A DNA stretch of 64,000 nt, taken from sequence record LT960552.1; one strand, 5' to 3'. Below are positions 1,645 through 18,730 of the stretch, in pieces (position 1 is the first letter of the stretch; each line of letters opens with the position of its first letter). The translations under genes and the position numbers were made by a program. The notes beneath the pieces were generated by a model, which searched no databases, was not told the origin of the DNA, and saw only the letters and a list, made by a program, of their open reading frames with translations.

Positions 1645-1720
1645 GCCTTTGTAGCTCAGTGGTTAGAGCGGGAATCTCTAAAATTCTTTGTCGTCGGTTC
1701 GAGTCCGACCATCGGCACCA
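1645..1720 (+). tRNA. tRNA with CTA anticodon (amber-suppressor type)
   Basis: Anticodon arm GGAAT-CTCTAAA-ATTCT, canonical D and T arms, encoded CCA; two mismatches in acceptor stem. Confidence 0.85.
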
Positions 1721-14620: not shown

Positions 14621-14724
14621 GGGCGTAATTGCCCTATTTTAATTAAGAGATTTAAAATATACATTTGAGAACTTCATGGTATGGGAAAAGTAGTGAATTT
14701 CTTTCAAATGTTATCGTAAATATT

Positions 14725-14753
14725 TGAAACAACTAAAAAAATTGTGGTATAAT
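14725..14753 (+). promoter_or_regulatory. TGAAAC-N17-TATAAT promoter upstream of module element 4
   Basis: TGAAAC 14725-14730, TATAAT 14748-14753. Confidence 0.8.
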
Positions 14754-14760
14754 ATAGTAC

Positions 14761-14886
14761 ATAAGGCAACGGAATCTTACAGCAAAAATACTAATTTTGA
14801 TGAAAACGAAACGACGAGGTTCGAATCCTCACCCACGAATTGCCTTATTATTAGTGGGAGCATGGTGCTGGATAAACAAAGATTCC
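14761..14886 (+). ncRNA. CAGCA-module element 4: minimal permuted tRNA-like cargo
   Basis: GGAATCT-TACAGCAA ... GAGG-TTCGAAT-CCTC, CCCAC/GTGGG closed acceptor, short D-like hairpin ... AGATTCC. Confidence 0.8.
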
Positions 14887-14907
14887 AAAATTTAAGTTAG
14901 AAAAATA

Positions 14908-14936
14908 TGAAACAAATCAAAAATTTGTGGTATAAT
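14908..14936 (+). promoter_or_regulatory. TGAAAC-N17-TATAAT promoter
   Basis: TGAAAC 14908-14913, TATAAT 14931-14936. Confidence 0.8.
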
Positions 14937-14945
14937 ATAAGAAGT

Positions 14946-15056
14946 AAAGCGGGATGGTGATTGATGAAAGCTGTTATTTGATTCTAGACAATCATAATAA
15001 GCGAGTAATAGAACAGGGTTCTTAATATCACATGGGTTCAAATCCCTGTCGCTGCA
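14946..15056 (+). pseudogene. degenerate class II (Ser-like) tRNA-like RNA with elongated anticodon arm
   Basis: T-loop TTCAAAT, weak acceptor AGCG/CGCT, long stem TTATTTGATT/AATCATAATAA with 6-nt loop CTAGAC. Confidence 0.5.
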
Positions 15057-15057
15057 C

Positions 15058-15188
15058 AAAAGCAACAAATGAAATCTTACAGCAAACACAACATTTTTTC
15101 CTTGCATAGAAAAACGGTGGGGTTCGATTCCCCAACATCCAAGTTGCTTTTTAGGATGTGTCTGGACGACCGTATGACACAGATTTCA
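15058..15188 (+). ncRNA. CAGCA-module element 5: minimal permuted tRNA-like cargo with TGC loop hairpin
   Basis: TGAAATCT-TACAGCAA ... TGGGG-TTCGATT-CCCCA, ACATCC/GGATGT closed acceptor ... AGATTTCA. Confidence 0.8.
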
Positions 15189-15193
15189 GTACT

Positions 15194-15268
15194 GTTCCGT
15201 TAGACAAATTGGTATAGTCACCACACTTTCAATGTGGATTTCTGAGGGTTCAAGTCCCTCACGGAACG
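15194..15268 (+). tRNA. tRNA-Glu(TTC)
   Basis: CCACA-CTTTCAA-TGTGG; GTTCCGT/ACGGAAC. Confidence 0.93.
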
Positions 15269-15272
15269 CTAA

Positions 15273-15387
15273 AGGATTCGTACAGCAACAATAAACTCTT
15301 AAAATTCAATTGGTGAAAACAACCTTGCAGTTCGATTCTGCTTCCACAATGCGTGGATCTGGTGGTGGATAGAAAAAACCGAATCCT
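15273..15387 (+). ncRNA. CAGCA-module element 6: minimal permuted tRNA-like cargo
   Basis: AGGATTCG-TACAGCAA ... GCAG-TTCGATT-CTGC, TCCAC/GTGGA ... CGAATCCT. Confidence 0.8.
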
Positions 15388-15416
15388 GATTTTAATTAAG
15401 AAGTACTAAAGAATTT

Positions 15417-15578
15417 GATACACACGGATTTATACAGCAAACATAATCCTAAAATAAAACATACGATAATGTTATTAACTCGGAATTCGTTCCTTTCGTT
15501 AGTACTTGGCAACTTGGGTACTTAAATAAGTTGTATCACCTCATGTGTATCGGATTAGTGGTGATTATAAATAAATCC
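15417..15578 (+). ncRNA. CAGCA-module element 7: multi-hairpin cargo
   Basis: GGATTTAT-ACAGCAA ... ATAAATCC; internal hairpins CAACTT/AAGTTG and ATCACC/GGTGAT. Confidence 0.7.
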
Positions 15579-15614
15579 AGTAAATCAAAAGTACCTTTAT
15601 CGGTACTTTTTTAT

Positions 15615-17663: not shown

Positions 17664-17794
17664 TGGAATTCAACAGCAATCTTCACTTACTAAAAACAGC
17701 TACCTCACGGTTTGTAGGTTCGAGTCCTACCTTGTACTTTCGAGTACATGTGGTGAAATCGGTAAACACGGCTGTCCAAAAGAAATGAATTCCA
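17664..17794 (+). ncRNA. CAGCA-module element 10: circularly permuted Leu-type tRNA
   Basis: TGGAATTCA-ACAGCAA, 3' half (ACAGC, variable arm, GTAGG-TTCGAGT-CCTAC, TGTACT), TTCG, 5' half (AGTACA, TGGTGAAATCGGTAAACAC, GCTGT), TGAATTCCA. Confidence 0.9.
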
Positions 17795-17847
17795 GTATTA
17801 ATTAAGACATAAATATTCTTATACATTATTTTTGTAGGAATATAGAT

Positions 17848-18453: not shown

Positions 18454-18573
18454 TGGAATTCAACAGCAAATCATTCAAAACACGTAGCATGTCGTAGGTT
18501 CAAGTCCTACCAGTACTTAATTGTACTGTAGCTCAGTCGGGAGAGCAGCCACCTTAAAAAGAAATGAATTCCA
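18454..18573 (+). ncRNA. CAGCA-module element 11: circularly permuted Val-type tRNA
   Basis: TGGAATTCA-ACAGCAA, 3' half (ACAC-GTAGC, GTAGG-TTCAAGT-CCTAC, CAGTAC), TTAATT, 5' half (GTACTG, TAGCTCAGTCGGGAGAGC, GCCAC-CTT), TGAATTCCA. Confidence 0.9.
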
Positions 18574-18730
18574 GTATTAATTACAAAGAGAACCAATAAT
18601 GTACACTAATATTTTTGATATATTAAAAGATTTAACAGTGTTTGGAAAAGTAACATATCCAGTAAAATAAAATAATTAGGTTATTTCGAAGTTCTAAAAC
18701 AACGAAACATTTACTAACGTAAAAAGAATT

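What the first reader, a model, noticed from the sequence alone, without database searches (positions are those of the whole stretch)
14761..15578. Covarying leader-to-loop pairing (pseudoknot) in three neighbouring module RNAs
Seen in sequence: the 8-9 nt just 5' of the module is complementary to an internal hairpin loop, with a different sequence each time. ATAAGGCAA (14761) pairs with TTGCCTTAT in the acceptor-closing loop, AAAAGCAAC (15058) with GTTGCTTTT in the equivalent loop, and GATACACA (15417) with TGTGTATC (15544). Three independent sequences keeping the same pairing argues for selection. Inference: a pseudoknot that locks the 5' end onto the sealed acceptor end, or a switch controlling processing.
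Basis: partly seen in the sequence, partly recalled or inferred. Interest (0 to 1): 0.7.

Follow-up and report, generated by a model that had tools for sequence, protein, structure and literature searches.

The report
5'-end-to-loop pseudoknot in phage Y-like RNAs
Three small tRNA-shaped RNAs of a giant Yersinia phage tie their first 8-13 bases to a distant hairpin loop, and related phages keep this knot by changing both sides together, so it is a real, selected and apparently undescribed feature.

Summary
The window is Yersinia jumbo phage fHe-Yen9-03. In three "module" RNAs of its tRNA array, the bases just 5' of the handle stem are complementary to the apical loop of a sealed hairpin. M1 has 9 bp, M2 has 9 bp, and M4 has 8 bp as reported, extendable to 13 bp with two G·U pairs.

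In each module this is the most stable helix, and the two strands are otherwise unpaired. Orthologs in at least nine related phages and contigs keep the pairing through compensatory changes:
- M1: three different Watson-Crick pairs at one position.
- M2: a U:A/A:U swap.
- M4: four double changes, and a wholly different helix in GAP32.

The leader strand starts at the RNA's 5' end. For M1, and for M2 in Mimasviruses, that is a predicted transcription start. For M2 here it is a processing site, fixed within a nucleotide by an RNA-library contig.

The carriers have YrlA topology but carry an ACAGCAA handle, and they miss the Rfam YrlA threshold. The phage encodes a Ro60-fold protein (DUF2828) about 200 kb away.

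My best reading is a structural clamp that buries the 5' end and locks cargo to handle. That function is inferred, not shown.

This scan had already noted the module family, here and in other phages.

The parts
14724..14753 (+). Promoter P1 of M1: TTGAAA, 18-nt spacer, extended -10 TGGTATAAT. The predicted start is about A14761.
   Evidence: 11 of 12 matches, with TG. The record also annotates a -10 signal here. Conserved in 6 orthologs with constant spacing to the leader.
14761..14769 (+). M1 pseudoknot 5' strand, ATAAGGCAA; the first bases of the transcript.
14771..14886 (+). M1 module. In order: handle stem GGAATCTT/AAGATTCC, ACAGCAA motif (14779-14785), variable region, T arm (14816-14830), sealed acceptor-like hairpin (14832-14858), D-like hairpin (14859-14869).
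14840..14848 (+). M1 pseudoknot 3' strand, TTGCCTTAT, in the 17-nt apical loop.
   Evidence: Eight pairs are invariant; the ninth is AU in 3, GC in 2, UA in 1 and unpaired in 1 ortholog.
15058..15066 (+). M2 pseudoknot 5' strand, AAAAGCAAC. It starts right after the 3' end (C15057) of the upstream U RNA.
15071..15187 (+). M2 module. In order: handle stem GAAATCT/AGATTTC, ACAGCAA (15079-15085), T arm (15119-15133), sealed hairpin ACATCC/GGATGT (15135-15159), D-like region.
15143..15151 (+). M2 pseudoknot 3' strand, GTTGCTTTT, in the 13-nt apical loop.
15412..15424 (+). M4 pseudoknot 5' strand, AATTTGATACACA.
15426..15578 (+). M4 module. Handle stem GGATTTAT/ATAAATCC, ACAGCAA (15434-15440), conserved cargo that is not tRNA-like, and sealed hairpin ATCACC/GGTGAT (15535-15565).
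15544..15556 (+). M4 pseudoknot 3' strand, TGTGTATCGGATT, in the hairpin loop.
   Evidence: In a related metagenomic contig G15553>A turns a U.G pair into U-A.
14949..15057 (+). Upstream U RNA. It is not part of the pseudoknot, but it sets M2's 5' end. It lies between promoter P2 (14907-14936) and M2's leader in Eneladusviruses only.

Best explanation
M1, M2 and M4 are small non-coding RNAs of a phage family built like bacterial YrlA Y RNAs. A short stem joins the 5' and 3' parts and is followed by a conserved ACAGCAA motif (the 'handle'). The handle carries a cargo. In M1 and M2 the cargo is a circularly permuted tRNA body: T arm, loop-sealed acceptor stem, D-like arm.

These three RNAs have an extra 8-13 nt 5' extension that starts at the very first base of the RNA. 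It pairs with the apical loop of the sealed hairpin and forms a pseudoknot.

Shown:
- the complementarity;
- its maintenance by compensatory change;
- its compatibility with the rest of the fold.

Supported but not shown: its position at the RNA's 5' end, which rests on a promoter-consensus prediction for M1 and on one metagenomic contig for M2.

Inferred: the helix is an architectural clamp.
- It leaves no unpaired 5' bases. In E. coli-type hosts this protects against RppH and against 5'-end-dependent RNase E attack (established knowledge).
- It sits only 1-4 nt from the weak 7-8 bp handle stem and may prolong it by stacking.
- It occupies a long loop that would otherwise be open.
- It fixes the cargo hairpin against the handle.

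The result would be a closed, rigid and long-lived RNA. This RNA probably serves as the partner of the phage's Ro60-fold protein (DUF2828/DUF7788).
For: - Positions and complementarity.
- Above chance. Only the three flagged modules of the nine in the window show it, and the trailer control is negative.
- Covariation in M1: the ninth pair is AU in 3, GC in 2 and UA in 1 ortholog. The other 8 pairs are invariant while the flanking loop bases vary.
- Covariation in M2: a U:A/A:U swap, and a helix that shifts and extends in L145.
- Covariation in M4: GAUACAC/GUGUAUC becomes UUAGCAC/GUGCUAA in CBB and UGACGGA/UUCGUCA in GAP32. A G.U becomes A-U in a metagenomic relative.
- M1 against M2 (paralogs): one swapped pair, plus one G:C pair deleted on both strands.
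- Energy: the pseudoknot duplexes are -8.8 to -13.5 kcal/mol; the handle stems are -5.2 to -8.5. Forcing the pseudoknot strands unpaired costs the nested fold 0.1-0.7 kcal/mol in M1 and M2.
- 5' terminus: the extended -10 box is 7 nt before M1's strand in all orthologs. Mimasvirus M2 has the same promoter and nearly the same spacing. A 141-nt RNA-library contig puts the upstream U RNA's templated 3' end at or within one base of C15057, so M2 starts within one base of A15058. In Ea47, BF and L145 the strand also starts right after GCAC.
- Ro60-like partner: DUF2828 is present in all 5 related phages tested. The model has pLDDT 90.3, and the top 13 PDB matches are all Ro60.
Against: - There is no experimental probing, and no end mapping of M1, M2 or M4.
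- None of the four modules M1-M4 was seen in the one RNA library that shows the neighbouring U RNA. tRNA-Glu is also missing there, so absence says little.
- Other modules with equally weak handle stems (M3, M6, M7) have no pseudoknot. Protection or handle extension is therefore not a general need of the family.
- Among about 20 family members from unrelated phage contigs that have loops of 9-25 nt, leader-loop pairing is not enriched. The feature is clade-specific.
- A transcript starting directly at the handle stem would also have a paired 5' end, so burying the end alone does not explain the extra helix.
- No upstream promoter or mapped end shows that M4's strand is 5'-terminal.
- 3D feasibility is only argued from linker lengths; nothing was modelled (one search was not folded).
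- The Ro60-like gene lies about 200 kb from the RNAs. Binding is untested.
Confidence: 0.6

Rival explanations
1. Folding or processing switch. The leader-loop helix forms first during transcription, because both strands are made before the 3' halves of the hairpin stem and the handle stem. It then either guides folding or alternates with another structure, controlling cleavage by RNase P, RNase E or RNase Z, or controlling release of neighbouring RNAs.
For: - The order of synthesis allows the helix to form first (sequence order).
- For M4, a nested fold that includes the 13-bp helix replaces the handle and hairpin stems.
- M2's leader abuts the processing site of the upstream U RNA.
- Established knowledge: M. 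smegmatis YrlA is cut by RNase P in its sealed acceptor stem (PMC4201824).
Against: - No conserved alternative partner exists for either strand.
- The pseudoknot strands do not overlap any other helix, so nothing forces mutual exclusion.
- The acceptor-like stems are 5-6 bp. Chen et al. regard such stems as poor RNase P substrates.
Confidence: 0.15
2. Intermolecular pairing. The leader of one molecule pairs with the loop of a second copy of the same RNA, giving a head-to-tail dimer or a chain, rather than pairing within one molecule.
For: - Each leader matches only its own module's loop. That fits homodimers as well as intramolecular pairing.
- If the body is a rigid L shape, the two sites could be far apart.
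Against: - Intramolecular pairing is favoured by local concentration.
- The handle is joined to the tRNA-like core by 9-nt and 37-nt linkers, so distance is not a barrier.
- In M4 the hairpin lies only 5 nt from the handle stem.
- I could obtain no direct evidence either way.
Confidence: 0.08
3. No function. The match is chance, or a by-product of paralogy and promoter conservation, or a DNA-level inverted repeat.
For: - M1 and M2 are paralogs.
- M1's leader lies next to a highly conserved promoter.
- The helices are short and AT-rich.
Against: - Compensatory double changes occur in all three modules across several lineages.
- GAP32's M4 has a wholly replaced helix.
- The G.U pairs would be A/C mismatches on the other strand or in DNA.
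- Shuffle tests and the six negative modules argue against chance.
Confidence: 0.04

Closest known systems
YrlA, the bacterial and mycobacteriophage Y-RNA-like tRNA mimics (Chen et al. 2014, PMC4201824; Wang et al. 2018, bioRxiv 10.1101/312249; Rfam RF02553)
   Same: - The order of elements is the same: 5' strand of a terminal stem, variable arm, T arm, loop-sealed acceptor stem, D arm, 3' strand.
- A conserved motif sits on the 5' strand of the terminal stem.
- A Ro60-fold protein is encoded in the genome.
- The core of module M7 matches RF02553 at E = 7e-6.
   Different: - The handle motif is ACAGCAA, not GNCGAAN0-1G.
- The Rfam score is below threshold for M7 and absent for M1 and M2.
- The protein is DUF2828/DUF7788, not Pfam TROVE, and lies about 200 kb away rather than within 4 kb.
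- Neither YrlA paper contains the word 'pseudoknot' or describes a pairing of the 5' end with the acceptor loop.
tRNA-like structure of turnip yellow mosaic virus (acceptor-arm pseudoknot) and tmRNA
   Same: These are tRNA mimics in which a pseudoknot helps to build the region around the acceptor end.
   Different: - There the pseudoknot forms the acceptor stem itself and leaves a free CCA end for aminoacylation.
- Here the acceptor stem is an ordinary hairpin, its loop is captured by the RNA's 5' end, and there is no free acceptor end.
- This comparison rests on established knowledge and was not tested here.
Circularly permuted tRNA genes of red algae and archaea
   Same: The T arm and 3' acceptor half precede the 5' acceptor half and the D arm. 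The acceptor end is initially sealed by a loop.
   Different: - Those are processed through a bulge-helix-bulge motif and a circular intermediate into working tRNAs with an anticodon loop.
- These modules have no anticodon arm. They have a conserved non-tRNA handle and acceptor stems of only 5-6 bp.
5'-terminal stem-loops that stabilise bacterial RNAs (for example the ompA 5' hairpin)
   Same: A fully paired 5' terminus, known to block 5'-end-dependent decay.
   Different: Here the partner of the 5' end is a distant hairpin loop (a pseudoknot), not a local hairpin. The stabilising effect is inferred, not tested.

Membership tests
YrlA (Rfam RF02553) | Score at or above the Rfam gathering threshold (69 bits) | tested here: not met
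   M1, M2 and M4 give no hit even at E <= 10. The core of M7 scores 36.2 bits at E = 7e-6, over model positions 24-84 only.
YrlA | Element order: terminal stem, V, T arm, sealed acceptor stem, D arm, terminal stem | tested here: met
   Nested folds of M1, M2, M3 and M7. Pair counts for M1 and M2. M4 does not meet it, because its cargo is different.
YrlA | GNCGAAN0-1G motif on the 5' strand of the Ro60-binding stem | tested here: not met
   All modules carry ACAGCAA (or NCAGCAA) at that place.
YrlA | Encoded within about 4 kb of a TROVE/Ro60 gene, on the same strand | tested here: not met
   No TROVE match in 3 phage genomes. The Ro60-fold DUF2828 gene is at about 102-104 kb of the record (same strand) and the RNAs are at about 303 kb.
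Y RNA in the functional sense (partner of a Ro60-type protein) | A Ro60-fold protein is present and binds the terminal stem | tested here: inconclusive
   - Presence and fold are shown. DUF2828+DUF7788 is found in 5 of 5 relatives.
- The model has pLDDT 90.3, and the top 13 PDB hits are Ro60 at E = 2e-10 to 4e-7 and TM 0.46-0.59.
- The model is of the Erwinia phage ortholog, which is 92% identical.
- Binding was not testable: the complex job was not folded.
RNA pseudoknot (hairpin loop paired with a distal single strand) | Crossing helices that can coexist, with covariation support | tested here: met
   The strands cross both the handle stem and the hairpin stem. They are free in the nested fold. 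Compensatory changes occur in all three modules.
Circularly permuted tRNA gene | Yields a tRNA with an anticodon arm after processing | tested here: not met
   No anticodon stem-loop can be formed from the ends. The handle with ACAGCAA takes its place.

The most novel reading that the evidence does not exclude
The pseudoknot turns these tRNA mimics into topologically closed, end-less particles. The captured 5' terminus and the extended acceptor-side helix would imitate a specific tRNA-processing intermediate, such as a precursor with paired leader and trailer. The RNA, alone or on the phage Ro60-like ring, would then act as a decoy or gate for a host enzyme or defence nuclease that reads tRNA ends. 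That would be a new way for a phage to shield its own tRNA supply.
Probability: 0.12. Interest if true: 0.8.

Novelty: new variant of a known kind. Interest (0 to 1): 0.6.

Why it matters
Y RNAs and their bacterial YrlA relatives are described as a protein-binding stem plus a cargo module. The YrlA papers I read describe no tertiary link between the two.

A covarying helix that ties the RNA's first bases to the far end of the cargo has three consequences:
- It gives a clean, mutable handle for compensatory mutants, to ask what shape these phage tRNA mimics need.
- It suggests that some members are built for unusual stability or rigidity.
- It adds a structural constraint for modelling the RNP formed with the widespread but unstudied DUF2828 Ro60-like proteins. 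At least 5,760 homologs were found in the protein search.

It also marks exactly where three unannotated RNA genes of a sequenced phage begin.

Tried and rejected
- Rfam at the gathering threshold and at E <= 10 names nothing for M1, M2 or M4.
- Pfam TROVE is absent from the phage genomes. I first read this as 'no Ro60'. I revised that after a lead from the scan's notes to DUF2828, which I then tested.
- Sequence and profile searches of DUF2828 against PDB sequences find no Ro60. Only the fold comparison does.
I used the 92%-identical Erwinia phage ortholog returned by the protein search instead.
- Complex prediction for protein plus M1 RNA was counted but not folded. It is no evidence either way.
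- I looked for the pseudoknot across the wider family. There were 124 distinct modules from IMG/VR contigs and the related phage loci, of which 38 had loops of 9-25 nt. Outside the Eneladusvirus/Mimasvirus clade there are only weak candidates (L110, L066, L070, L027) and no enrichment.
- I looked for trans targets of the pseudoknot strands in the window and found no extra copies beyond chance.
- T4 stable RNAs rnaC and rnaD have a different architecture.
- No RNA-seq of an infection exists in the indexed runs. The metagenomic RNA libraries show only the U RNA.
- ViennaRNA cannot fold pseudoknots. I only summed the nested energy and the duplex energy, without a pseudoknot penalty.
- MAFFT misaligned M2's leader and M4's loop, so some pair counts understate the pairing. 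I used anchor-based comparison instead.

Full report
**What the window is.** The flagged stretch is 100% identical to Yersinia phage fHe-Yen9-03, a 352.6-kb jumbo phage of the genus Eneladusvirus. It is 93% identical to Serratia phage BF and the Erwinia pEa_SNUABM phages. It is about 70% identical to the Mimasviruses CBB, GAP32 and XbC2 and to Erwinia phage Kaldavass. The region is a tRNA array with 23-27 tRNA calls in the window. In the public records only the tRNAs and a few short ORFs are annotated there.

**The carriers.** Nine elements between 14.7 and 18.8 kb share a 'handle'. It is a 6-8 bp stem such as GGAATCNN/NNGATTCC, whose 5' strand is followed directly by ACAGCAA, with one variant each of GCAGCAA and TCAGCAA.
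- Three elements are short hairpins.
- Five carry a permuted tRNA body in this order: handle 5' strand, variable region, T arm with GGTTCGAWTCC, a 5-6 bp acceptor-like stem sealed by a loop, a D-like arm, handle 3' strand (M1, M2, M3, M6, M7).
- M4 has the same handle but a different conserved cargo. It holds an ACUCGGA...UCCCUUCG helix, a GCAACUWG hairpin and a sealed 6-bp hairpin.
- An exact-pattern scan of IMG/VR shows that the handle-plus-permuted-tRNA design is common in phage contigs.

**The observation.**
- Shuffling the loop, or shuffling the leader, rarely gives as good a match (p = 0.001 to 0.025).
- The 3' trailer and the six other modules of the window show nothing.
- The three duplexes are the most stable helices of their RNAs, at -8.8 to -13.5 kcal/mol, against -5.2 to -8.5 for the handle stems.
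- Forbidding the two strands to pair costs the nested fold only 0.1-0.7 kcal/mol in M1 and M2 and 3.5 in M4. The strands are otherwise largely free, and the long-range helix can coexist with the handle, T arm and hairpin. That is a pseudoknot.

**Covariation in M1.** I compared seven orthologs. Eight pairs never vary, although the unpaired loop bases beside them do. The ninth pair is A:U in three, G:C in two, U:A in one (IMG/VR contig L134) and a U/U mismatch in GAP32.

**Covariation in M2.** The Eneladus helix AAAAGCAAC/GUUGCUUUU becomes UAGCAACA/UGUUGCUA in Mimasviruses. This is one U:A/A:U swap and a one-step shift. It becomes GAAGCAAUAU/AUGUUGCUUU in contig L145.

**Covariation in M4.**
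- GAUACAC/GUGUAUC becomes UUAGCAC/GUGCUAA in CBB, with four pairs changed on both sides.
- It becomes UUAGCAC/GUGCUAG in Kaldavass and XbC2.
- In GAP32 the sequence is unrelated, UGACGGA/UUCGUCA.
- A related metagenomic contig changes a U.G of the extended part to U-A.

The G.U pairs fit RNA of the + strand only. M1 and M2 are themselves paralogs: their helices differ by one swapped pair and by one G:C pair lost from both strands.

**Position at the 5' end.**
- M1 lies behind a strong sigma-70-type promoter (TTGAAA, 18 nt, TGGTATAAT), which the record also annotates. The paired strand begins 7 nt after the -10 box in every ortholog, at the expected start.
- In the four Mimasvirus-type genomes M2 has the same promoter, and its strand begins 8 nt after the box.
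- In Eneladusviruses a 109-nt element, which I call U (14949-15057), sits between that promoter and M2's leader.
- One wastewater RNA library (X17) contains a 141-nt contig that matches only U, without mismatch, at depth about 99. The rest of the stretch has depth 0, so this is not phage DNA.
- That contig closes on itself through one untemplated C, and the junction reads ...GCUGC-A-C+C+A|GCGGG. This is a CCA tail.
- It places U's templated 3' end at or within one base of C15057. The downstream RNA therefore begins within one base of A15058, the first base of M2's pseudoknot strand.
- In Ea47, BF and L145 the strand also begins right after GCAC.
- For M4 I have no evidence on the 5' end. It follows M3 after an AU-rich spacer.

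**Is it a Y RNA?** The element order is that of YrlA (PMC4201824; bioRxiv 10.1101/312249).
- Several defining features fail. The Rfam model does not reach threshold. The GNCGAA motif is replaced by ACAGCAA. No Pfam TROVE protein is encoded.
- A lead from earlier notes of this scan pointed to DUF2828, and I tested it.
- All five related phages encode a protein of 503-513 aa with DUF2828 plus a vWA-like DUF7788 domain.
- Its nearest named neighbours in a language-model search are TROVE plus vWA_Ro60 clusters.
- A confident model of the 92%-identical Erwinia phage ortholog (pLDDT 90.3, pTM 0.89) matches only Ro60 structures in its top 13 PDB hits. These are frog and human Ro60, D. radiodurans Rsr and Thermus phage phiLo Ro60, at E = 2e-10 to 4e-7, over the whole length.
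- The gene lies about 200 kb from the RNAs.
- Three of four other module-bearing IMG/VR genomes have a DUF2828 match. Two are above the Pfam cut-off, and none has TROVE. I ran no negative control for this.
- These RNAs therefore work like Y RNAs on present evidence, but I do not file them as YrlA members.

**Mechanism.** The pairing and its selection are shown. The 5'-terminal position is supported by prediction and by one contig. The function is inferred. I favour an architectural clamp, for four reasons.
- The RNA has no unpaired 5' bases, a state known to block RppH and the 5' sensor of RNase E.
- The helix lies 1 nt from the handle stem in most orthologs (4 nt in Eneladus M2), so it may stack on it and lengthen a weak stem.
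- It fills a 13-19 nt loop.
- It pins the cargo hairpin to the handle.

Linker lengths of 0-3 nt and 2-5 nt around the loop strand allow a helix lying across the end of the hairpin stem, but not a classical coaxial H-type stack. The long linkers (9 and 37 nt) between handle and tRNA core remove the distance objection. None of this geometry was modelled.

Points against a purely protective role:
- M3, M6 and M7 do without the helix.
- The wider family shows no enrichment.
- A transcript starting at the handle stem would be protected anyway.

Rivals are a folding or processing switch, for which I found no conserved alternative pairing, intermolecular pairing, which I could not test, and chance, which covariation excludes.

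**Novelty.** My literature searches found no description of the ACAGCAA handle family, of DUF2828 as a Ro60-like protein, or of a pseudoknot between the 5' end and the acceptor loop in Y-like RNAs. Other agents of this scan have noted the module family, on this window and on other phages.

Noticed in passing
window 14949-15057: Unannotated 'U' RNA between promoter P2 (14907-14936) and M2.
- It has a T-loop-like GGGTTCAAATCCC but is called by neither ARAGORN nor Rfam.
- In wastewater RNA library X17 it forms a 141-nt contig at depth about 99 that closes on itself: 111 nt plus k-1.
- The closure runs through an untemplated C, and the junction reads as a CCA tail joined to G14949.
- U is therefore an abundant, CCA-tailed stable RNA.
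- It is either circular in vivo or was ligated head to tail during library preparation; I could not tell which.
- U is present in Eneladusviruses and in contigs L141 and L145, and absent at this place in Mimasviruses.
   Followed up: partly
window 15426-15578 (M4): M4 has the ACAGCAA handle, but its cargo is not tRNA-like. The cargo is conserved and covarying: an ACUCGGA...UCCCUUCG helix with an inner GGA/UCC hairpin, and a GCAACUWG...UWAGUUGU hairpin. What it imitates is unknown.
   Followed up: partly
record LT960552.1, about 102.2-103.7 kb (locus L008 1090-2616): A 508-aa DUF2828+DUF7788 protein. Its close ortholog models confidently as a Ro60-type ring plus vWA domain. The family is very large, with at least 5,760 hits at E <= 1e-10, and I found no publication linking it to Ro60.
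   Followed up: yes
window, 3' of each module (e.g. 14887-14900, 15387-15400, 17794-17806, 18573-18585): A conserved AU-rich motif follows the handle's 3' strand in most modules and in orthologs: AG/TG, then WTTTAATTWAG or TATTAATTA. It may be a processing site that sets the 3' ends.
   Followed up: no
window 15586-15612: The hairpin GTACC...GGTAC followed by TTTTTT, between M4 and tRNA-Ser (15615), looks like a weak intrinsic terminator. The consensus scan did not list it.
   Followed up: no
window 14779-14785 with 14866-14869: In M1 the AGCA of the ACAGCAA motif could also pair with UGCU of the D-like hairpin. This alternative is not shared by the other modules.
   Followed up: no
L004 5346, L006 5317 (orthologs of M6): The sealed acceptor loop of the M6 orthologs in Kaldavass and GAP32 contains the palindrome TCAGTACTGA. 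It could lengthen the hairpin or allow loop-loop dimers.
   Followed up: no
window 1645-1720: tRNA with anticodon CUA (an amber suppressor, called 'Pyl' by ARAGORN) in the same array.
   Followed up: no
L110 8840 (IMG/VR contig of 401 kb): This is the best candidate for the same kind of pseudoknot outside the clade. The leader TAAATACA abuts the handle stem and matches TGTGTTTA in a 10-nt sealed acceptor loop. It is not significant on its own (p = 0.04), and no DUF2828 match was found in that genome.
   Followed up: partly
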